The notes beneath the pieces are model-generated. The model saw only the letters and a program-made list of their open reading frames with translations. It made no database searches and was not told the DNA's origin. This document shows, piece by piece, positions 26,715-64,000 of a stretch of DNA of 64,000 bases. The first letter of the stretch is position 1. Each line of letters starts with the position of its first letter. Source of the DNA: Dimorphilus gyrociliatus (taxonomy: Eukaryota > Animalia > Annelida); the NCBI GenBank assembly GCA_904063045.1, contig CAJFCJ010000019.1:2796684-2860683 (forward strand). The letters are read 5' to 3'. Both the position numbers and the translations under genes were made by a program.

Positions 26715-29700
26715 CTACATGGTGGAAGAAGTAGACGAGGTACTTTTTGTCCGTTGTTTACTTCTTTTGGTTAAGGCAAGGTATGAAAAGATATTCAAAT
26801 CGATGATTTCCGCAGCCTTTGGTCTAGATTCAGGATTTCTATTTAACATTTTTGTAATGATATCTGTTTCTTCAAAATTCTCTTCAGTAAACGTTTTGTC
26901 AAAACTCAGAGATTTTGCTTTTTCCAAGGTCATTCTACGTTCCATCTCCGTGCTAAACAAATTTAACAATTCAAAAAACAATAATCCTAATGAATATATG
27001 TCAATTTTGTTATTATAATGTAAACCATTAATTTGCTCTGGACTCATATACAATTTTGTACCAACATCTCTAGTATGTTTACTGGAGCGAGACGTATTGG
27101 TATCTTGCAGGTCTTGAAGCCCTTCCTCTTCTATAGCTAGGCCGAAATCTCCCACCTTTATCTGTTCATCCAAGGAGAAAAATATATTCGATGGCTTTAA
27201 ATCTCGATGTATAAATCCATTTAAATGTATATATTCTACAGCACTAACAATTTGGTAAAAGATACCAAAAGATTTTTCCTTGCATATCATATCTCGAGAG
27301 AATAGCCAATCTGCCAAATTATTTTTTTCGCACAACTGCATTTGTATATAGAGATAATTCTTTGGAGATGGCGGCGTAGAAGCAGAGTTACTAAATGTAC
27401 TTTTGCTTTCTGTTTCGACTGTTACAGTTTTTCGATTTCGAATTTCTGAACGATATTCATTACTTCGTTTGTCCTTTGAATTGCATGCAGAACTTTCTTC
27501 GAAAACAATTGAAATACTATCCGAATAATTATTATTTGAAAATTTCCTCACGTGACAGTTATCCGAATCGGATTGTGAAGAAGGGTCTAATTCAAGGTTA
27601 CTGTCTTCATATTCATCGTCTCTGGGGAATGTATAGCTAGTAGTGAGCTTACTAGAAAAATTAACTGTGGGTAAGGTTTCTGTAGCAGTTGGATTTTGTG
27701 AATATTCGCTTCCGCTAATATAATCTTTCAAGTGACGATTGAGAACATCTCTCTCTTCTTGCCAACCAAGGGGAGGACGCTCAACCCAAGATTGATAATA
27801 ACGAACAATTCCTGGATGGTCTAGCCTAGCTAAAGCTTGAGCTTCTCTCAAAACTTTTCTCTCGGTTTCCTTGCTTGAGCCAGTGCATATCCGTTTAACG
27901 GCATATTTAGCCTTATCAATATAATTTCGAGCTTCAAAAACAACACCGAATCCACCTCTTCCTAGAACAGCCAATTGCTCGAAATCATTTAAATACCTCG
28001 AGAAAAATTCCGAATCTTTAATTTGATCATCAGAATTTTTATCCATCTCAATAATAGTATCGGTTTCGGATTTTGAACTCTAAAATATGAAAATATACCA
28101 ACATAATTAGATTGTGAACTTGGAGATTTGATCTTACAATTGAGCTGGACATTGATTCATTTTTCGTTCTTTTTCTAGTGTTGCACTTGAGATAGATGGT
28201 TCGTACAAGGACAATACAGACAATGAATGCAGCTAATAGGCTTCTCCTAAAAGTAATTAAAAATATACAGCATATATTAATACAGAATATAATCTCAATC
28301 TCTGCAATTGATTAGAATAATTACTAACCAATCCATGTAATGAATGGTGAATATAGCATATTCATTTATGACAGACTGATTAGAGAATATTTGAGTTGTT
28401 TTATAAGTCGTTTTCTTAATGACTTTAAGGGGTTTGTCCGGAAATAAGTAGAGCCCGTTTTCTACAACATTGTAATCATAGTATACATTTCCTAAGTTAT
28501 TATTTAAATCATTACTGTATGAATCTGTATGCTGCCAAATAGAGACATCTGTAGATTTTGTCGAAGACCAACCAATTCGAAGTAAATTTAGAGGTCCCGT
28601 AATTGCTTGTGTTTTGGATGGAGCTATTGAAAAGACAATTAGCACAAACATTGTGTTAAACGTATTATTACCCACCATTAGCCATATACGGCTTCCACTT
28701 TAATTTGGGCATATTTGGTGACATAGATCGCTTAGACTCAAGGTAATTTTGCATCGAAGAAGAAGGTTTTACGTAAAGTTGATCCTTATAAACTCCTACA
28801 ATAAATATATATTTATGAATATATTACAATTTAAACTATATCATATGATAATACCTATATACAAAGCCGCACTAAGGGCGACTTCAGTTTTATCCGATGT
28901 ACTCGCTAAAGAGGGCACATGTTTTGAATCAAAGAGGCTTAATTCAGAAATTTCTTCATTACGAATTTGCCATATTTGCGCCAGAGGAGATTCAAGCTAT
29001 TTTTAAATATATAAATATATACACATATAGTTTGTACTTTCGAAAAAGGAATGATAATCATATATTATACATTTTGTTTCCAAACAATCGCTGAATTCCC
29101 TGGACTACAAGCGCTTATTATTCCATCGGCCGTAATGAAATTATAATCTAATGTCTCATGTGTATGTGGTCCAGCGTTTTGAGATTTATCATCTGTATAG
29201 GATATATATATATATATGTTTACATAAGTAATGTAGCTCTAAAAAAGAAACTAGTTTACGTACCGTCCATTGGACAAGATACAACTTCAACATCATCAAT
29301 ATTATCATCTGAATTTTTTGAGATTTTTGGTATATACTTAACTTCATGATCTCCAACGCTAAAATTCCATCTATTTTCAATATAGCATAATATAAAAGTT
29401 ATATAAAATCAAAAAATATCTAAAAATACTTTTCTATTCCTGATTCTACTTCTACTGATCTTACAGTCTTAGAGTTTCGATTTAGAACTACAGTTCCTTC
29501 GCTTTCTTGCACGGAATCTGCTTCGAATTTCTTACAACCCTTAACTGAACACTGATATTTTAGCTGTAACGGTTTTTCGATAAGTAGAGAGCCTAAGTGT
29601 ATTGATTTTATTTAGGATGCTTACGCGGCCAGATAAAATGTCGATTCCATACGTTTCCGAAGTCTTTCCACCAACTATTACTGAATCATCGCTTAATTTA

Positions 29701-30205
29701 AAGGAGGAGCTTAACAAAGTATCAGCGTTCAACGGTAGTGGTTCAACACTTTTCCCATCAAACTGGTATAGGGAACCGTCCAAAGATGGAATTAAACGAG
29801 TTCGGATGCCATTTCTAGTAACCTATAAATATTTCTGATAGATTAAAAGAAATTCTGTTGTAATAGACATACTTCAAAGCTTCCAATGCTTGATGAAAGT
29901 AAAGATTCTCCCACTTTATGTGACCATTTCAAATCACCATTTTTCGAATTTAACAAAGAAAATTTCCCATCAATAGTACTCACTAACAGATAATCTCTGA
30001 AGAAATAGTTTTCATTACATATAGATAACTGGTTTTTTGAATCAGTAACATACTTTTTTGCATTATAACAGTTAATACTTCTAGAAGATTCCTCTGAAAT
30101 GTCCTCAACTCTTATTGTGTGGTCCGAGGCACAAACTAATAGTAATAGAGTTAACGAAAAAATAAAATTGATTTGAATAATGGTCCTCAAGTGATCTGCT
30201 CGCAT
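26715..30205 (-). CDS. EIF2AK3: eIF2-alpha kinase PERK, about 8 exons
   Basis: Luminal motifs LLVSTIDGKF, LIPSLDGSLYQFDG and KWNFSVG, then a TM segment. Kinase RYLNDFEQLAVLGRGGFGVVFEARN...YAVKRI, large insert, YLYIQMQLC, HRDLKPSNIFF, DFG, VGTKLYMSPEQ. Confidence 0.96.
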
Positions 30206-30254
30206 CCTTTTGTTTAATGGGATACATTTATTTTTTTTGACGTTTGACACGCTG

Positions 30255-30340
30255 GAAATCCGCCATTTTTTGTTTACAAGTTACATCGTGATCATGTGAC
30301 AGCTGTCTGTACAATAGTTGGTTGAAAATGGCGCCAAAGG
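30255..30340. promoter_or_regulatory. Putative bidirectional promoter core at the PERK 5' end (two outward-facing YY1-type AAAATGGCG motifs flanking TCATGTGAC)
   Basis: CCGCCATTTT at 30260-30269, ATCATGTGAC at 30291-30300 and AAAATGGCGCCAAA at about 30325-30338. Confidence 0.4.
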
Positions 30341-31024
30341 TGTTTACTTTTTATTCCACTCTTTTCTGTAACTAAAAATTTCTTGTAATATTCAATGTAA
30401 CACAATAGTAATTAAGTTTCTGTAGAATATCACAAAGTTTTCTTTTTGATAACAAGAGGAATTTGACGAAAAATGACTTTTTATTGAATATATAGGCGCT
30501 GCAACCAATGAGCGATTTTGTATTATCGACGCAATATATTATCTGATTACTGATTGGTAATTTGTTTAGATCTTTCGAGATGTTAAAAACACGTAAGCTT
30601 AAAATTATCATAGCTATTCCGTGTTAATTCTTTTCGAAAAGAAATATATTAAGTAGGCCAGTCAGCTAAGTTATTATTATTTAGCCAAAACTTTATTAAA
30701 AGTAAAATCTCTAGGTTTTATTAGAAGAATTTCCTAAAGAAAGAAATTGGCTAAATTCGATAAAAAAATAATTATTTTGGTTTATCCAATCGATCCTATC
30801 AAACTAACAACATATACAAATTCTATATTGATTTTAATTATGATCATGTAATTCACATTGCTATTTCATCATACTGCATATCATATTAGTTTTAAAAGCT
30901 CGTTACTATTTTTAAATAGCAGGGGAATTTGATAAATCGATTTTTGGTTTTTAAAGTTATCTCTTTCATTCGATTTAGTGTATTATGAACGATTTTCATA
31001 ATAAAGTAAAAAAGAATGATACGG

Positions 31025-31601: not shown

Positions 31602-34600
31602 ATGGCTGAGAGTTTTAACGCTAACGACATTGAAAAGCAACCGGACTCAAATCAGAGCACCGCTAAACAGGCAAATGTCTCATTGTCTTCGCAAAAAGAT
31701 GGCAATAGTCTAAAATCGGACGCAGCCGATTTACCTGAAAGGGATCAGTGGGCGAACAAATTGGATTTTGTCATATCCTGCATCGGGTTTGCCGTTGGAC
31801 TAGGAAACATTTGGAGATTTCCTTACCTATGTTACAAGAATGGTGGAGGTAAAAAAAAAAAGTTAATTTTCTCCACTTTTTGCAGATTGACATTGTTAAT
31901 TCACTACGAAATATCAAACCTATAGGCCCTAGTATTCTTTTAACAGATCTTAACAATATACGTACAGCTATCTAAAGGGATCTTGTTCTTAGATAACTCA
32001 TTAATTGAGATTGACATTTTCTATATAAATTTAAATGTTTAAACTAAGTAAATGAATATACTACTAATTTTCATATAGTAATAAACAAACAAACATAAAC
32101 TATAGATAAAATAGAAGAAGAACACATTAAAAAGTGGCAAGTGTTTTTTACTTTCATTATTATAGCTGTACTTTAAATCATTAATTTTCTTTTATAATGA
32201 ATTTTGTTATAATAATAAAATAAAATTCAACTTTTAAAAAAGTTGAAACTAATAACAAAAGTTAAAACCGATTATTTCAACAAATCCTATTATATATTTA
32301 AAGTAAACGTTATACTTTATATGTTGTTACAGCTTTTTTTTTACCCTATCAATACATATTTGTATTTTTCTATTACAGGGGCTTTTCTTATTCCATACTT
32401 TATCTGCCTAATATGTGGTGGAGTTCCAATTCTCTTCTTAGAAATTTCACTTGGTCAGTTTATGAGGCAAGGAGGGTTTGGAGTTTGGAAAATCTGTCCT
32501 ATATTTCAAGGTTAATTGAATATTCAATATTTTGCTAGATTGAAAGAATCAAATTTACACAACTTTCATACGACACCTTTTCAAATATTGTTGTTTTAGT
32601 ATTAAATTTATGAAAAAAAAGTAATCTTCTTTCCATATTTAAACTCTGAATATCAGAGCACTACATAGAGCGTATTTATACAGCCCTACTTTCGACAGTG
32701 AGCTAACTCAAGTAGGTCAAGTTCCTTCATAGAATTTTATATGGAGCTAGCTCCTTTTGAGATTAAAAGATTTTAATATGACTCGATTGCTAATTTACAT
32801 AATTTCTAATAAATTTAATCCATTATACATTCATTAAGCAATTCAAATCATAGTTTAAAGATTTGAAATTAATCTAAAATGATTCAACTTTATAATCTAT
32901 TCTAAAGAATATTAATGACATATAAATCTGGATATATGTAGCATATAGTTGTGTGCAAATAGTATTATTAGTCTATAGATTTTCAACTAAAATATCTATT
33001 CAAGCGTTTTTTTTTTAAATACTTTTGAACGTTAAAATGTTATTTCAACAATGAATTGAATTCTATTGGTATTGAAATTCGTTCTTGTTCTATCTTGTTG
33101 TATTAAACAATTCAATTTAATTTAAAAAATCAAACGAGATATATTGGTTCAATGTTTATATTTCTGAAATATTTTGAAAGAGAACCATATTATATGAATA
33201 GAATGACGTCATCTGTACTAAAAAGAAGCTATGCCATGCTAGTAAATAAGAGAGGGAACAAATCGATTTTTTTTATCTCGCCTATATTTCATTCTTATTT
33301 TTCGTCATCTTTGTAGAATTACCACGCAAGTGAAATCCTTTTGTCATTTCGTATAGAGAAGATAATCTACCAAATCGTTTTATAATTGAAACTATCTAAT
33401 TAGACATGTTAATTATTTAATCATAAAACAACTAATAGAAATTTTTTATGACTTTTGACAGTTAAAAAATCATTTTGCATTTATCTTTGTTTAAGATTAT
33501 TCTTAGTAAAAACAAAGCTTTTATTCAAGTATGAAAATACAACTTTTAAAATGTTAATATTTCCGATTGAAAAATCTGGTACCCAATCAATCCAGGGTTG
33601 TTTTTTTTTTTTTTTTTAAATAAAACCATCAACTGGATATTAGTCATAGTTTGTAGTCATGGTCATCCCATGTTTGTTGTTTTCAATGTAGTATAGTAAC
33701 CTCATCTATTCATTTCAAAAAGGTGTATATACTTTCGAGTAAAAAATAGACGAGTACGGGGTTCTGTTATAGATAATTAATTAATATTGAAATATAGTAA
33801 AACGCAAACTTTTCCTTTCTTTCCTAGGAATAGGATGTGCAACAACGGTTATAGTATTCCTTATGAATTGTTATTATATTTTGGTAATTGCCTGGGCAGT
33901 TAATTATTGCGTTATGTCTTTTAACTCTGTTCTTCCTTGGTCACATTGTAACAATACTTGGAATACTCCAAATTGCTCGACTTTTGAAACTTCCATAAAT
34001 AAAACCAACGTAACAGGCCGACAAGATTCTGTAATTGAATTTTGGGATAGGAGGATTTTGGATATTTCCGATGGAGTTGACAATCCTGATGGTATCGTAT
34101 GGCAGAATGCTGTATGCTTACTATTCGTTTGGATTGTTTGCTATTTTTGCGTCTGGAAAGGGGTTAAGTGGACTGGAAAGGTTGTATATTTTACAGCACT
34201 TTTTCCATACGTTGTCCTGACCATCCTGCTCATTCGTGGAGTTACATTAGATGGAGCCTCTAAGGGTATTACATTCTACCTGAAACCTGATTTTAACAAA
34301 TTGAGTGATTCACAAGTTTGGATTGATGCGGGAACACAAATTTTCTTTTCCTACGCTATAGCTTTGGGAGCAATGACTGCTCTGGGATCCTATAACAAGT
34401 TTAACAACAATTGCTATAAAGATTGTATTATTGTTTCTATTGCTAATTCTGCAACAAGTTTATACGCTGGATTTGCAATATTCTCTGTTCTTGGCTTTAT
34501 GGCTGAACAGCAAAATGTTCCGATTGAGGATGTTGCTGCAAAAGGTCCTGGGTTGATATTCATCGTATATCCTAAAGCTGTAACTCAGATGCCTATACCA

Positions 34601-57700: not shown

Positions 57701-60240
57701 TCTAATTACTTTTACTAATATTAAAAAAGACATTTTATTAGTTCTACTTTATGTTTTATACCAAAAAGATTATGAAAATGTATTGTGTATTACTTAGTAT
57801 CTTTTTATATTTTTACCAGAATACTTTATAGTAGTATAGAACACTTTTTGCCTTTTACAGCCTATTAATTATAGTAGCTCGACAAAAGTAATATAAAAAA
57901 AGCTTTTGATTTTTTATTAATTGTATGATTATACGGTGAGAGTTTTTAGTTTTCGTTTGTTTTAAAAAAATAAGGAAGAAATATCTATTCCACCTTGTTT
58001 ATTTCAATGGTATACTCTAAATTTAAAATAATACTGTATTTAACGTTCTCGTTATTCAGATAATTATCCCCCTGAAGACTTCATTGGTAGCATCGAAAAG
58101 AGAATCAGAAATGATTCGCAGAAAGCTGATCAAATAGAAAGGAATGTTGACCAAAGACCCGCTGAAAAATCTTACAACTGGTTAACAGAAACGTCGTTAT
58201 CTAATAGGAATAGAAAAGATTTCAATGAAGATCTATCGTCTGAAAATCACTCTTTTCTATATAACGATCGATCCCCAAGAGATACGTTTACTAATGAGAA
58301 GAGATTATCATCAAGTTCAAGATCGGTAGGTTTAATCATTTTTAAAAGAAAGCTCGAAATCCCTCCAAAGAGTTTAGTTTATGTAACAGTTATAAAAATG
58401 AGCGATTTTACAAATTACAAATTACTAAAAATTGCATTAAAAACTCCCTTCCTCTGAGTATCATTTGGCGTCCAATTAATTCAGCACGATGCATCACATA
58501 TACTTCCTCTTTCGAAGAAAGAGATCTAATTAAGAAATTTTCAAAAGAGATTGATTTGCAGGGGGTTAACGAAAAAGAGCAAAAAAATTGGTATAGACAA
58601 GTATTTAAATCGTTGCACAAAAAGAAACCCGAGCAAGGTTTGTTCTCTTTCGCTTCTTCCTCACTGTTACTTAAACAATAAGCTTTTAAAAAAATCGTTA
58701 GCTTATTAATCCCAGAGTGATCTTTTAAATAGCTTTTTTTTTCTGTGTAGTATTTTTATCTTCTGTTCTTTTTCCAGAAATGAACACTTATGCACCTACT
58801 TATAAATTTTCAGATTTTGAATATCCAAAATTTTCAGGTAGATCAGTTTTGAACACACTTTTTATGTTTTTAGTTATTAATTTTAAAATAATTAGCTAAT
58901 AATTTTAATTTACGCACACATAAATAGTGGAGAATAAGGAGAATATTTATGACAAAACAGCTAGTCATAAGTTAAGGGATGAACTCTCCTCTCAAAAATC
59001 TACAATATATTTTAATGGTAAAAGAGAAATAAGTTCCACGAAGCACTTTCTATTGAATTCTATCTATTTAAGTTATTAATTCTTTTATTAATGCGTTCTT
59101 CTTAGATCCATCGAGAAATAAGTTTAGTTCAACAGAAGATTCTCATCCTAGTGAAAATCTATATTCGAGGCGAATACAAACTCAATATGATCAACCTCGT
59201 TTAAGAGAGCACGATCGTTGTTCACCCGCAGAAAAGTGTATAAAAAAAAAAAGTTCGTTTTTCGATAAGAGGCAGTGTAAAAGGAATCGTTTCAAGGATT
59301 TACGATTTTGTGAACCAAATAAAGAAACTTTTTATAGTAAGTTGTATGTTAGGAATTTTTCAAGAAACTTCATATTACCTCATCTTTATTTTTATTAGAT
59401 CGGGCAAGTAATGAAAATTCGATTCGAGATCACTCAGAGGATATTAAGAGGCCCGTAATGTATACACCCCACGAATTAAACGGAATAGCTAGGGCTAAAT
59501 ACAATTTTACGGCTGAAAAAAAGAACGAATTGACATTAAAGAAGGGTGATATGATCAATCTCGTTCGGCAAATAGACCAAAACTGGACTCAAGGTCAATG
59601 CAATGGGCATATAGGTGTTTTTCCAACAAAATATGCTGAATATCTAGGCCATCCCGAATCAGAAATATACATTAAGGAAATCACAGCAGAAAGGGCGTTG
59701 GCATTATATAATTTTAAACCACAAACTGATATTGAATTGCCTCTTCGCAAGGGCGAAACAATCAAGTTAATCCGAAGAGTTGATCAAAATTGGTGGGAAG
59801 GTCAAATTGGAAATAGACAAGGAATTTTTCCGTCATCATATGTAAAAGTAATTACATTTCCCCCTAACCAAATGAATGATTTTATTAATGGGGAAGTCTT
59901 ACATACATCAAGCAACGACGGATACTCGTCTTCCAATTCATATATAAATATGAAAAAGCAGACGCATGATGAAGGAAAGAATCTGTAAGTGTGATACATC
60001 GAATTACTTCTTGCTCTTTTTTTTACTTAATATACCAACAGATATCGAGCTCTATTTAAATATGTTCCCCAAAGTTATGACGAACTAGCATTGGAAGAGT
60101 CAGACTTAATCAGCATAACGGAAATTTGCCGTGATGGTTGGATGGTGGGAGAGAATAAGAGAACGGGTAAATTCGGAACTTTTCCCGGAAATTATGTTCA
60201 AGCAGTCTTCAACTTTCAAGTACCGTGTTATAAAAGCTAA
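51702..60240 (+). CDS. Sorbin and SH3 domain adaptor (SORBS/CAP/vinexin family) with N-terminal PDZ, SoHo-like motif and three C-terminal SH3 domains
   Basis: Split PDZ GGSPWGFRLQGGREFGEKLKIGR|...GMQVGDILMEING. SoHo-like NWYRQVFKSLH near 58586-58620. SH3 domains ARAKYNF...GVFPTKY, ALALYNF...GIFPSSYV and YRALFKY...GTFPGNYV. Some internal exon joins are not fully resolved. Confidence 0.82.
52291..52310. repeat. (CT)n microsatellite in SORBS intron 1
   Basis: Direct observation. Confidence 0.85.
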
Positions 60241-60290: not shown

Positions 60291-60500
60291 TTATAGATAA
60301 TAAAGACGTTGTCGTCGACGTCGCTCGCATATGTCAACAGGTACGCGGCAGTACAGTGACGCAGTGCGCTCGATGATTTATGTTAATTGCGCATAACTAA
60401 CGCCGTCTACTGTTGTAGTATATACTAGTTATAGTATAGATTAAACGCGCGCTTTTGCTTCGGTTACCATGTCGTCCGTCTTAATAGATAGTTTTTGACG

Positions 60501-63500
60501 ATGCAAAAAGCGGTTCGCGTGAATGAATCGCAACTTTTGTACTTGTCGAGCAAAGCGAAACAGGAAAATACAAAGTGCGGATATTTGCATAAGAAGAGCG
60601 TCGATACTGGAAAATGGCAGCAAAGATACTTCATCCTCTACCAGAATCTACTGTTTTATTACGAGAATGACCAGATCGTTCGACCGTCCGGCGTCGCATT
60701 GCTGGAAGGTTCCTACTGCGACCGCGTCATTACCCCTGGAAAAGGTGCTGACAAACAGGTAGGCGCGCGTTCGCTGCACTGGCGGCGTTTGTTGCCTAGC
60801 AACCTACTCTTAAACGTTCGATTAATCCGCCTTTTCAGTACTGTTTCGCAATCTATTATCGGAGGGAGGGACAACAGTCGAGGCAATATGACATGCGAGC
60901 AGAAACCGAGGCCGAATGTTCCGTATGGGTAGATGCCATTAAGCAGGCAAGCTTCGCCAAAGTCGTCGAGCAAAAAGAGTGCTTGGAGAAGAAGCACTCT
61001 CATTTACTGCAGATCTTGGAGAGCGAACGACAGGCGAAATGGCACTATGTTCAACAAACGGAAGAGTTGAGCGCCGAAGTGAAGCAACTAAAGTGCGAAA
61101 TGAAGGACTACAAACGCGAAAGACGCGCCTCCGGCGGCGAGCAATCGTTAGAGGAGGAAGGCGAGGAGATTCGCAAGATTAAGAAGGTTCAAAGTTTCTT
61201 CCGCGGTTGGCTATGCAGACGTCGCTGGAAGCAGATAGTTGACAAGTACATACGTTCTGAACACGCAGAGTCGATGCGCAAGCGTAATTCGATCGTTTTT
61301 CGATTGGTCGAACAAGAGGAAGAGTACGTCCAGCAGTTGTCCGCCTTAGTCACTGTCTTTCTGCGGCCACTTCGAATGGCTGCCAGCAGTAAGAAGCCGC
61401 CGATTACGCACGAGGACGTCAATAGTATTTTCCTTAATGCGGAAACTGTCTTGTTCCTCCATCAAATCTTCTTAAAGGGTCTTATGGCGCGTATGGAGAA
61501 TTGGCCCACTCTAGTACTTGGTGACCTCTTCGACATGCTTCTTCCGATGCTTGGGATCTACCAGGAGTATGTTCGTAATCACCATTATAGTTTGCAGGTT
61601 CTAGCAGAGTACAAGCAAAAGGCAGAGTTCAATATGCTCCTTAGACGCTATGAGGAAAAGTCAGTTTGTGAGGGTCGAACTCTAGATCAATTTCTTACTT
61701 ATCCAATGCATCAGGTACGTACAATTTATCCTCTTTTTGCTCTATAGCGTAATGGCGCCTCCGTTTACACTTTTTTAAATGTTTCAATCTATACAGTGTT
61801 ATATATTTATATGCGTAAACTTTGCACGCGTTTTTACGGTTTCGTTTTCACGCCTCGAGTAGAATTGATGCTAATTAGCTTTTTATATAAATATACGTGA
61901 CGCCAACGCCGTTCTTTCACTTTCGCTTTTTCGATCCGTCGCATTCCTAAAGCCGCTCTAAGCAGGCTTCGGAATTATGCGATTAGAAAGGAAAGTAAAG
62001 AAAACGGCGTCGGTGTATGCTGCGAAAACGAACCGTTTGTTTTTTTCCTTAATACTTTCATATTAAAACGGGGCTATGGCACCGTTTACAGTTGCAGTTG
62101 CAGTTTCAACGCAGTCGAGCGGCCAGTTATGCTCATGCTGCCGATTCCCTAGGCCTTCAACTTCCGGACGCAATAAAAAGAGCGTCAATTTGTTCTACTA
62201 GCGGAGCAACGGATAGCAATACCAGCACATTGGAGCAATTGCTTACCTACCCGATGCATCAGGTTTTCTATTCGTTGTACAAAAATATCAAGCCCTTGAT
62301 GTTTCACTATCCCTCCTTTTATTCTTTCTTTACGCTTTCACGCACCTATGCCGCACTTTCGATGAATTCAATAATTCCTGGTTGTACTATTACAACAATA
62401 CATAGTTTTTAGAGAGCATTCAAATAGTTGTAGAGGCAAACGAATTTTTTCTCCTTCCTCCTTTAGATTCCCAGATACATCATTACAATCCACGAACTAC
62501 TAGCTCACACGCCGCACGATCATGTGGAACGTAAGAGCTTGGAGTACGCCCAGGGCAAGCTGGAAGAGTTGTCACAAATCATGCAGGATGAAGTTAGTGA
62601 AACGGAGAATATCCGAAAGAACTTGGCAATTGAAAGGATGATTGTCGAAGGGTGCGATATTCTTCTAGATGTCAATCAAACGTTTGTTCGTCAAGGGACA
62701 CTTATTCAAGTTATAAACGAACCCCGCAAGAATAGTAGAACCCGTCTTGGTTCTTTCTCTTCAACATTTAAAGAGTCTAAGAAAGAAGCTGTGAGACAAG
62801 TCTTCTTGTTTACTAATCATATGCTTTTGACAACCAGAGGATCGTCAGGACGCTTACATTTAGCAAAGAATGAAGACATCTCATCGTGGAAAAAAGTGAT
62901 AAGGGATTCTGGCGGGAAGACTTACGGAAAAATTTCATTATCCGATTGCACGCTAGTAGAAGATACGAGTTCGGATACGTTCTACTACGACGAAGAGGAT
63001 TATAGCAATGTTCGAGCTGGAGATAGCCTTCTCCCCACAGCCGCCCAACAAGATAAAGCCGACTACAACGGATTAGATTTTCGATTAATTGTTGACAATC
63101 GTACTCAAAATGGTCAACCTTGGCTCATAACTCTAGTGGCAAACAGTGTTCAAGAGAAGGCTGCATGGTGTTCTGACATATCGAGCTGCATTGAAAACCT
63201 ACATTATTCCGATCTTCTGCAAACCTCAATGGCTGAAACATCGGCTGTTACGATGCCTCAACAAGTACGCTCTGATCCTAAACTCTTCCGAGACGATATT
63301 GACATCAAGTTCTCGAGAACGCTCAATTCGTGTAAAGTACCACAAATTCGGCACGCGACCGTCGAGAGATTATTAGATCGTTTGACTGATCTGCGCTTCT
63401 TGTCAATCGATTTTCTTAACACCTTTCTACTAACTTATAGAGTGTTTACGTCAGGCACTGATGTAATTTGCGCTCTTCGAAAGGTTTATCATTCACCTAT

Positions 63501-64000
63501 AGAGAACGCTAAAGTTCCTATAACAACAGATGAGAAATGCGGACATGATGTAACGCACAGACACTCGTTCGATCATGAAATGCTTAGAAACGCAGCAGGG
63601 AGTCCACCCTCCAATTTTCATGGACGTCTTGCTCCCAAAGATAATAAACTACTCATTAAACCACAAGCCGAAAAGGTTCGTCGCATTTCAACGGGCGGTT
63701 TGCGTATTGAAGTGACGGGCGAAAAGCAAAAGATTGATGTTTCCGGAGCTAGTTCGTTTACTCGGTATGACCGAGCCGATTCAATAGAAGAGGTCGATGA
63801 ACCCCCTGCCTTGTATATACCAACTAAGGCAAAGTTGGCACCGATAGCTAGCTGCGAAACGTTAAGTGATCAAATTCAAAAAACCCCCGAACGTGCATCA
63901 AGTAGTGGGGACGATGACGATGATGACGATGACAAGGAAACCTTAATGCCTCTTGCTGTTCTCAGTAGACGAACTGCCGTTCGATTTTCAACAACCCCAC
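60501..64000 (+). CDS. RASGRF: Ras-specific guanine nucleotide-releasing factor (PH-CC-IQ-DH-PH-REM), 5' partial, continues beyond the window
   Basis: MQKAVRVNE... start, [52 protein letters not shown]...LTYPMHQ|[65 protein letters not shown]. Confidence 0.96.
60791..60803. promoter_or_regulatory. RFX X-box-like motif GTTGCCTAGCAAC in RasGRF intron 1
   Basis: Imperfect palindrome matching the RFX/EF-C consensus. Confidence 0.4.
62092..62262 (+). CDS. Putative alternative 57-codon RasGRF cassette exon ending in a second [12 protein letters not shown]
   Basis: Acceptor tttacag at 62091 and donor cag|gt at 62263. The 171 nt exon is phase 0-0, stop-free and in frame with both neighbouring exons. 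Confidence 0.7.

What the first reader, a model, noticed from the sequence alone, without database searches (positions are those of the whole stretch)
61679..62466. Hidden RasGRF cassette exon that re-encodes the DH-domain CR3 motif and carries kinase sites
Seen in sequence: the constitutive exon ends [12 protein letters not shown] (61679-61714, act cta gat caa ttt ctt act tat cca atg cat cag|gt). An intronic phase 0-0 exon (62092-62262) ends [12 protein letters not shown] (aca ttg gag caa ttg ctt acc tac ccg atg cat cag|gt) just before the IPRY exon at 62467. The two 36-nt copies differ mostly at synonymous positions (act/aca, cta/ttg, act/acc, tat/tac, cca/ccg), which indicates selection on the peptide rather than a fresh duplication. 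The 45 aa in between contain RSRAAS (RxRxxS, Akt/RSK and 14-3-3-type consensus) and KRAS (PKA-type). Established: LxxxLxxPxQRIPRY is the conserved CR3 region of Dbl-homology domains, which contacts the GTPase. Inference: inclusion gives two copies of one helix segment separated by a phosphorylatable linker. This could be a splice- and phospho-controlled switch for the Rac-GEF/DH module, with the copies competing for one structural slot. Tandem in-frame acceptors (cag ttg cag ttg cag) could fine-tune the linker length.
Basis: partly seen in the sequence, partly recalled or inferred. Interest (0 to 1): 0.8.

Follow-up and report, generated by a model that had tools for sequence, protein, structure and literature searches.

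The report
Conserved hidden coding exon in RasGRF
A 57-codon stretch inside an intron of this small worm's RasGRF signalling gene is a real protein-coding exon kept by selection; it repeats the half-helix that the intron interrupts, so including it would add a loop without breaking the domain, but I had no RNA data to show when it is used.

Summary
Exon 2 of a RasGRF gene ends [12 protein letters not shown]|GT at 61714. The 752-nt intron holds an open, phase 0-0 segment (62092-62262) that ends [12 protein letters not shown]|GT, and exon 3 starts IPRY at 62467.

New evidence comes from two sister lineages found in public assemblies (synonymous divergence 0.2-0.4):
- The segment is intact and has no indels.
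- 13 of 14 variable columns are third codon positions (p = 6e-6).
- dN/dS is about 0.02, and its dS equals that of the flanking exons.
- Only this reading frame is open.

It is therefore a translated exon, not a relic. A structure model of the Capitella orthologue shows that the intron cuts one continuous helix (CR3). The 12-residue copy is exactly that helix's N-terminal half.

The most likely function is a regulated cassette that adds a 57-residue loop, rich in Ser and Ala and carrying basophilic kinase motifs, in front of an intact CR3 helix.

The upstream intron part (61715-62091) is about ten times more conserved than synonymous sites. It folds into a very stable hairpin.

The cassette is absent from Capitella and Owenia.

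Inclusion versus skipping, acceptor choice and any phospho-switch remain inference.

The parts
60501..60758 (+). RasGRF exon 1 (start codon to the first donor; N-terminal PH region)
   Evidence: The translation matches the Capitella and Owenia RasGRF N-termini. The donor is CAG|GTAGGC.
60759..60838 (+). Intron 1, 80 nt
   Evidence: Frame analysis. It is invariant against the sister lineage L002.
60839..61714 (+). Exon 2 (876 nt, phase 0-0): coiled coil, IQ, and DH domain up to mid-CR3
   Evidence: Pfam RhoGEF E = 1.4e-24, profile positions 2-139. dS 0.32-0.42 and dN/dS 0.007-0.01 against the sister lineages.
61679..61714 (+). Copy 1: [12 protein letters not shown], the N-terminal half of the CR3 helix, followed by the strong donor GTACGT
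   Evidence: It has 5 variable columns among the three lineages, all synonymous. The donor scores 5.65.
61715..62091 (+). Intron part A: highly conserved non-coding sequence
   Evidence: It is 2.7-3.5% divergent, against dS 0.3-0.4. Variable columns are 5 of 230 paired versus 16 of 148 unpaired.
61895..62022 (+). Long, stable, conserved hairpin within intron part A
   Evidence: MFE -52.5 kcal/mol, z = -5.86, 0 of 200 shuffles as stable. The changes between lineages lie in the apical loop or in bulges. No Rfam match.
62085..62103 (+). Three in-frame candidate acceptors (AG at 62090-91, 62096-97, 62102-03)
   Evidence: They are invariant in all three lineages. The AG at 62090-91 is the first AG after the in-frame stop upstream.
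62092..62262 (+). Cassette exon, 171 nt (57 codons), phase 0-0
   Evidence: Only this frame is open. 13 of 14 variable columns are at codon position 3. dS 0.31-0.35, dN 0.0076, and no indels.
62110..62127 (+). RSRAAS (RxRxxS basophilic kinase motif)
   Evidence: It is conserved in the three lineages. 3.1% of composition-preserving shuffles carry such a motif.
62176..62187 (+). KRAS ([KR][KR]xS, PKA-type motif)
   Evidence: It is conserved. 6.6% of shuffles carry such a motif, and 0.27% carry both motifs.
62227..62262 (+). Copy 2: [12 protein letters not shown], followed by the weak donor GTTTTC
   Evidence: There are two synonymous changes among lineages. The donor scores -2.9.
62263..62466 (+). 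Intron part B, conserved in blocks, ending in a strong polypyrimidine tract and AG
   Evidence: It is 6-9% divergent with small indels.
62467..64000 (+). Exon 3 (runs past the window end): second half of CR3 (IPRY...), PH2, then REM and Cdc25
   Evidence: Pfam RhoGEF profile positions 141-177. In L002 the reading frame continues without an intron through RasGEF_N and RasGEF.

Best explanation
Window 62092-62262 is a genuine, translated cassette exon of the RasGRF gene. It most likely arose from an old tandem duplication of the last codons of exon 2 together with its donor site. The ancestral intron cuts the CR3 helix of the DH (Rho-GEF) domain in the middle. An exon inserted there can keep the fold only if it supplies the N-terminal half of the helix again, and that is what its last 12 codons do.

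Spliced between 61714 and 62467, the exon would leave an intact CR3 helix (copy 2 plus IPRY...). The original half-helix (copy 1) and a 45-residue Ser/Ala-rich linker would become a 57-residue loop in front of that helix. The linker carries one RxRxxS and one KRxS motif. The loop probably modulates the Rac-GEF module, possibly through phosphorylation.

Weak splice sites and a strongly conserved, structured upstream intron suggest that inclusion is regulated and not constitutive.

Shown: the coding constraint, the anatomy, and the helix geometry in an orthologue model. Inferred: which splice partners are used, that the exon is alternative, and every functional effect.
For: Sequence and anatomy.

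Copy 1 versus copy 2: pS 0.84, pN 0.07, p = 9.5e-5. This points to an old duplication with the peptide kept in both copies.

Two sister lineages were recovered through P0269 and P0374:
- The cassette peptide is 56/57 identical.
- 13 of 14 variable columns are at codon position 3 (p = 6e-6).
- dS is 0.31-0.35, the same as exon 2, and dN/dS is about 0.02.
- There are no indels, while both intron parts have indels.
- All five other frames contain stops.

An in-frame stop 17 codons upstream, and a stop 10 codons into the retained intron, mean that translation requires splicing from a phase-0 donor. The only good phase-0 donor is 61714.

The AF2 model of Capitella DH-PH shows one helix, residues 140-163, which the intron splits after residue 150.

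Copy 1 also stays ancestral-like and changes only synonymously. This argues that the skipped form is used as well.

The cassette donor is weak (-2.9 against 5.65) and the acceptor has no adjacent pyrimidine tract.

Intron part A is 2.7-3.5% divergent against dS 0.3-0.4, and it contains a hairpin with z = -5.9.

The intron is 752 nt; the reported median intron in Dimorphilus gyrociliatus is 66 bp (PMC7854359).
Against: No transcript-derived protein of this lineage appeared in the protein searches.

The exon is absent from Capitella and Owenia and from 268 RasGRF proteins and fragments. It is therefore lineage-specific, and its conservation is measured over three close lineages only.

The 45-residue linker has no detectable homologue or Pfam family.

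I could not model the included isoform, because the joined sequence was not to be submitted.

The kinase motifs are simple consensus matches.
Confidence: 0.62

Rival explanations
1. The segment is a constitutive exon. The 752-nt 'intron' is really two introns (377 and 204 nt), and every RasGRF protein of this animal carries the 57-residue insertion.
For: The coding constraint is as strong as in the flanking exons. No RNA data show skipping.
Against: The donor is weak and the acceptor lacks an adjacent pyrimidine tract. The flanking intron is strongly conserved, which is typical of regulated exons. Although synonymous sites between the copies are saturated, copy 1 still has the ancestral CR3 sequence. 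That is expected only if it still forms the helix in a skipped isoform.
Confidence: 0.15
2. The cassette is used with an alternative donor inside exon 2 (for example CAG|GT at 61597/61598). It then replaces the last ~39 residues of exon 2 rather than adding to them, making it a mutually-exclusive-like swap.
For: The swap is frame-compatible, and the GT at 61598 is conserved. An unrelated metagenome animal has a tandem duplication that starts at the same QVLAE position. There is a faint S-V/I-C similarity upstream of the copies.
Against: All internal phase-0 donors score poorly, at -0.6 or lower; 61598 scores -3.2, against 5.65 for 61714. The 45-residue part has no significant similarity to exon 2: 1912 of 2000 shuffles score at least as well. 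The swap would delete part of helix 85-117 and all of helix 120-130 of the DH core. Yet the strict conservation of copy 2 implies that the DH fold matters in the cassette-bearing form.
Confidence: 0.1
3. The segment is a non-functional relic of a partial duplication (a pseudo-exon), or a decoy splice site that acts only at the RNA level.
For: Duplications of the exon end plus donor do occur in this intron without coding capacity. In Ridgeia there are 118 copies of a 34-nt unit that contain stops.
Against: 13 of 14 variable sites are at codon position 3, dN/dS is about 0.02, there are no indels, and only one frame is open. An element acting only at the RNA level would not show a codon-periodic substitution pattern while its synonymous rate matches that of the neighbouring exons.
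Confidence: 0.04
4. The conservation of intron part A reflects an independent element hosted in the intron, such as an enhancer or a hairpin or small-RNA precursor, and not splicing control of the cassette.
For: Long introns of this species are reported to be enriched for open-chromatin peaks (PMC7854359). The hairpin at 61895-62022 is very stable, with a variable apical loop.
Against: Conservation covers the whole 340 nt up to the cassette acceptor, not only the hairpin. Rfam has no match. There is no compensatory change to prove any structure: 0 of 115 pairs. This rival concerns only the intron, and it is compatible with the exon being real.
Confidence: 0.3

Closest known systems
Alternative exons born by tandem exon duplication (mutually exclusive exon pairs; general literature, cited from my own knowledge)
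   Same: There is an in-gene tandem duplication, both copies are kept under purifying selection, and the synonymous sites have diverged.
   Different: Only the last 12 codons plus the donor are recognisably duplicated. The other 45 codons have no similarity to exon 2. The lengths differ. In the simplest splicing pattern both copies end up in the same protein instead of excluding each other.
Conserved, regulated cassette exons with conserved flanking introns (the class known from vertebrates and insects; cited from my own knowledge)
   Same: The length is a multiple of three. The splice sites are weaker than those of the neighbouring exons. The flanking intron sequence is far more conserved than neutral sites.
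   Different: Inclusion and skipping have not been observed. No Rbfox-type GCATG motif occurs in the intron. The conserved flank is a 377-nt, highly structured intron part.
RasGRF1/RasGRF2 (PH-CC-IQ-DH-PH-REM-Cdc25 exchange factors)
   Same: Exon 2 is 76% identical to Patella RasGRF1. Pfam finds RhoGEF, and RasGEF_N and RasGEF lie downstream. The intron position after TYPMHQ is the same in many animals.
   Different: None of the 268 RasGRF proteins and fragments retrieved has an insertion between TYPMHQ and IPRY. The phosphorylation sites known in mammals lie elsewhere in the protein (my own knowledge, not tested).
Splice-junction minisatellites in the same intron of Ridgeia piscesae RasGRF
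   Same: The same intron carries a duplication of the exon 2 end together with its donor.
   Different: In Ridgeia the duplication is a young array of 34 nt x 118 copies, 96% matching. The copies contain stop codons, and there is also a 59 nt x 27 array of the exon 3 start. Nothing there suggests coding use.

Membership tests
RasGRF (Ras-specific guanine nucleotide-releasing factor) | A DH (RhoGEF) domain followed by a PH domain | tested here: met
   Pfam PF00621, E = 1.4e-24 in exon 2, continuing in exon 3. There is a weak SOS1_NGEF_PH hit.
RasGRF (Ras-specific guanine nucleotide-releasing factor) | C-terminal REM (RasGEF_N) and Cdc25 (RasGEF) domains in the same gene | tested here: met
   In the sister-lineage contig L002 the exon 3 reading frame continues into a 980-aa ORF with PF00618 and PF00617. 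In the window itself this part lies beyond base 64000.
RasGRF (Ras-specific guanine nucleotide-releasing factor) | An N-terminal PH domain, coiled coil and IQ motif, with high identity to named RasGRFs | tested here: met
   The IQ hit has E = 0.0012, just below the Pfam cut-off. Identity is 76% to Patella vulgata RasGRF1 over 274 aa. The N-terminus aligns with Capitella and Owenia.
Alternative cassette exon | Flanked by AG and GT, with a length that keeps the frame and no stop codon | tested here: met
   AG at 62090-91, GT at 62263-64, 171 nt, open frame.
Alternative cassette exon | Protein-level purifying selection on the exon | tested here: met
   dN/dS is about 0.02 and 13 of 14 variable columns are at codon position 3 in three lineages.
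Alternative cassette exon | Both the included and the skipped mRNA are observed | not testable with these tools
The junction scan of metagenome contigs found 0 hits.
Mutually exclusive duplicated exon pair | Two exons that are homologous over their whole length and of similar size | tested here: not met
   Only 12 of the 57 residues match exon 2. The other 45 show no similarity. The lengths are 57 codons against 292 for exon 2.
DH-domain CR3 helix | The duplicated peptide is part of the conserved helix that continues into IPRY... | tested here: met
   The AF2 model of Capitella DH-PH (27-sequence alignment, mean pLDDT 77) has a single helix at 140-163, with the intron after residue 150. That this helix contacts the GTPase rests on established DH-domain literature and was not tested here.

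The most novel reading that the evidence does not exclude
The exon is a splice-controlled 'spare half-helix' switch. In the included isoform, two nearly identical N-terminal halves of the CR3 helix compete for the single slot next to IPRY. The linker between them, which carries basophilic kinase motifs, would decide by phosphorylation which copy docks, tuning or gating Rac-GEF activity. Inclusion itself would be set by the highly conserved 377-nt structured intron, whose outer stem pairs the region just downstream of the constitutive donor with the cassette acceptor.
Probability: 0.12. Interest if true: 0.75.

Novelty: new variant of a known kind. Interest (0 to 1): 0.55.

Why it matters
The case shows one clean way for a new coding exon to be born inside an intron that interrupts a structural helix. 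The exon end is duplicated together with its donor, so the new exon brings its own copy of the half-helix and the domain still folds.

The result would be a lineage-specific, probably regulated loop in front of the CR3 helix, the region that DH-domain literature describes as contacting the GTPase. RasGRF couples Ras and Rac signalling.

The case also offers a compact test system. The whole unit is under 1 kb, in a genome whose introns are mostly short. It could be used to study how intron RNA structure and weak splice sites control a cassette, and how loop insertions next to CR3 affect exchange activity.

It is also a reminder that gene models for this genome may miss conserved alternative exons hidden in the few long introns.

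Tried and rejected
2. A word-based protein search with the 106-aa intronic ORF found no candidate.
3. A full-length search with Patella RasGRF1, residues 230-480, listed 120 RasGRFs but none from this lineage and none with the insertion.
4. An exact look-up of the window's own 284-aa ORF found no record.
5. A junction-pattern scan of metagenome contigs gave 0 hits. I did not use the second scan.
6. Rfam on 61500-62600 gave only a chance-level riboswitch hit, E = 0.41.
7. A search for homology of the 45-residue linker to exon 2, at protein and DNA level, found nothing significant.
8. The pairing of the constitutive donor with copy 2 (repeat I1) was rejected, because the sister lineages weaken it.
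9. The idea that the cassette descends from a whole ancestral exon was rejected. In other animals the ancestral exon starts near GDLFDM, not at QVLAE.
10. The intron is not a repeat found elsewhere in the window.
All searches were done exon by exon, by reference.
12. My first tblastn run used an out-of-frame exon 2 query. I replaced it with a peptide-window scan.
Full report
**The observation**

The window carries the 5' two thirds of a RasGRF gene on the + strand.
- Exon 1 is 60501-60758.
- An 80-nt intron follows.
- Exon 2 is 60839-61714.
- A 752-nt intron follows.
- Exon 3 starts at 62467 and runs past the window end.

Exon 2 ends [12 protein letters not shown], followed by GTACGT. Exon 3 begins IPRY. 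The Pfam RhoGEF profile runs from positions 2-139 in exon 2 straight into 141-177 in exon 3.

Inside the intron, 62092-62262 is open for 57 codons, is preceded by AG, and ends [12 protein letters not shown] followed by GTTTTC.

The two 36-nt copies differ at 8 sites: 6 synonymous and 2 conservative replacements. pS is 0.84 and pN 0.07, Fisher p = 9.5e-5. No shuffled intron comes near the 10/12 peptide match.

**Is it a real exon?**

I used evolution instead.

A word search with the end of exon 2 returned one near-identical 284-aa ORF from public run assemblies (P0269) and a 294-aa cluster mate (P0374). Their contigs (L002-L005 from four runs, L006-L007 from two runs) represent two sister lineages. 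They are 91-95% identical to the window in DNA.

Against them, exon 2 has dS 0.32-0.42 and dN/dS of about 0.01. The upstream, weakly constrained DNA differs at 25-45% of sites and has many indels. These lineages are therefore far enough apart to reveal constraint.

In the 171-nt segment:
- The peptide is 56/57 identical in all three lineages.
- There is no indel, while both intron parts have some.
- 13 of 14 variable columns are third codon positions (binomial p = 6e-6).
- dS is 0.31-0.35, the same as the neighbouring exon; dN is 0.0076, so dN/dS is about 0.02.
- In the other two + frames nearly every change would be a replacement.
- All five alternative frames contain stops.

This is the signature of a translated exon. 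It rules out a decaying relic or a purely RNA-level element for the segment itself.

**How it must be spliced**

Read-through from exon 2 stops after 10 codons. The cassette frame has a stop 17 codons upstream of 62092. The AG at 62090-91 is the first AG after that stop. Translation therefore needs a phase-0 donor upstream and one of the AGs at 62091, 62097 or 62103.

The constitutive donor at 61714 scores 5.65 with a generic donor matrix. No internal phase-0 GT of exon 2 scores above -0.6. The simple cassette pattern (61714 to 62092, then 62262 to 62467) is thus the most likely, but it is inferred.

The cassette donor is weak (-2.9). Its acceptor has no adjacent pyrimidine tract; the T-rich stretch lies 27-55 nt upstream. 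This is what regulated exons usually look like.

**What the duplicated 12 residues are**

I aligned 27 RasGRF DH-PH segments and modelled the Capitella one. The model has mean pLDDT 77 and block means of 71-78 over this helix.

Residues 140-163 ([24 protein letters not shown]) form one continuous helix. The conserved intron falls after residue 150, in the middle of that helix. Many ORF-level hits from other animals read through at exactly this point, so the intron position is ancient.

The 12-residue unit is therefore exactly the N-terminal half of the CR3 helix. An exon inserted at this intron would break the helix unless it ends with that half-helix, and this one does.

With inclusion, copy 2 plus IPRY... 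restores the helix, with D-to-E and F-to-L changes. Copy 1 and the 45-residue linker become a 57-residue insertion in the loop between helix 120-130 and CR3.

The linker is Ser/Ala-rich (16 of 45 residues). It has no Pfam family and no similarity to exon 2. Its only four basic residues are arranged as one RxRxxS and one KRxS. Only 0.27% of composition-preserving shuffles have both motifs. This test is post hoc, so it is suggestive only.

**Alternative or constitutive?**

Synonymous sites between the copies are saturated, so the duplication is old. Yet copy 1 still has the ancestral sequence (9/12 identical to Capitella and Owenia) and changes only synonymously among the three lineages. If the cassette were always included, copy 1 would be loop sequence and free to drift. 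Its retention argues that the skipped isoform, in which copy 1 forms the helix, is also made. Together with the weak sites and the conserved intron, I put alternative use at roughly two in three.

**The intron**

Intron part A (61715-62091) differs by only 2.7-3.5% between lineages, about ten times less than synonymous sites next to it.

It folds into a long hairpin at 61895-62022, with MFE -52.5 kcal/mol, z = -5.86, and 0 of 200 shuffles as stable. Outer stems surround the hairpin. The outermost stem pairs 61749-61759 with 62079-62090, directly before the cassette AG.

There is too little variation for covariation: 0 of 115 pairs show a compensatory change. However, variable columns avoid the paired positions (5 of 230 against 16 of 148, p = 7.7e-4). 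One caveat applies: the structure was predicted from these same sequences.

Rfam has no match, and the sequence is not repeated elsewhere in the window.

Splicing control by RNA structure is my preferred reading. An independent enhancer or small-RNA precursor is a live alternative. The genome paper reports that long introns of Dimorphilus gyrociliatus often carry open chromatin and that the median intron is 66 bp (PMC7854359). The species name comes from earlier notes of this scan. I did not verify it independently.

**Distribution**

- Capitella has a 114-nt intron here with no second copy.
- Owenia has a 342-nt intron here with no second copy.
- Among 268 retrieved RasGRF proteins and fragments, no annotated RasGRF shows an insertion between TYPMHQ and IPRY.

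The exon is therefore specific to this lineage, at least among the sampled animals.

The same intron is prone to junction duplications:
- In Ridgeia it holds 118 copies of a 34-nt unit made of the exon 2 end plus donor, and about 27 copies of a 59-nt unit made of the acceptor plus the exon 3 start. All contain stops.
- A metagenome scaffold from an unknown animal shows a fresh in-frame duplication of the exon end plus the intron start.

The cassette looks like one such duplication that was recruited for coding.

**Limits**

There are no RNA data. The sister lineages are close relatives of unknown name. The phosphorylation, competition and tandem-acceptor ideas remain hypotheses.

**Verdict**

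This is a real, selected, previously unlisted coding exon with an unusual design that repairs the helix it interrupts. It is a new variant of exon birth by tandem duplication. Its regulation and function still need to be shown.

Noticed in passing
L009 (Ridgeia piscesae, GCA_025642075.2) 26867-30871 and 32653-34219: The orthologous RasGRF intron (about 7.3 kb) holds two arrays. One is 34 nt x 118 copies, made of the exon end plus donor (ITYPMHQ|GTAACA). The other is 59 nt x 26.6 copies, made of the acceptor plus the exon 3 start (IPRYIITVCQLL). That amounts to over a hundred decoy donors and about 27 decoy acceptors. The copies contain stops.
   Followed up: partly
L001 (ENA metagenome scaffold, 598 nt; protein P0061): An unknown animal's RasGRF fragment has a perfect in-frame tandem duplication of QVLAEC...TYPMHQ plus the first 7 intron codons. 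It is either a young duplication of the same type or an assembly artefact.
   Followed up: partly
window 60300-60900: The 5' end of the gene (5' flank, exon 1, the 80-nt intron 1 and the start of exon 2) is almost invariant against the sister lineage. There are 0 mismatches in 60700-60899, while dS is 0.3-0.7 further downstream. Synonymous sites and a short intron seem to be constrained here for an unknown reason.
   Followed up: no
window 61895-62022: A 128-nt hairpin with about 50 paired positions, z = -5.86, is conserved in three lineages, with the changes in the apical loop. It has no Rfam family. It could be a splicing element or a small-RNA precursor.
   Followed up: partly
window 62467-64000 and L002 7575-10635: Exon 3 appears to encode the rest of the protein (over 1000 codons: PH2, REM, Cdc25) without any further intron. 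The 36-kb Capitella gene has many introns. Synonymous divergence in exon 3 (0.6-0.7) is about twice that of exon 2.
   Followed up: no
proteins P0001 (491 aa) and P0151 (Adineta steineri, 1056 aa): Both database proteins contain large, near-perfect internal repeats of the DH region. In P0001 the repeat starts right after TYPMSQ. These are probably assembly or annotation duplications, not biology.
   Followed up: no
window 59458-59988: An SH3-rich ORF lies immediately upstream of RasGRF on the same strand. The gene order is conserved in L002 and in L006/L007.
   Followed up: no
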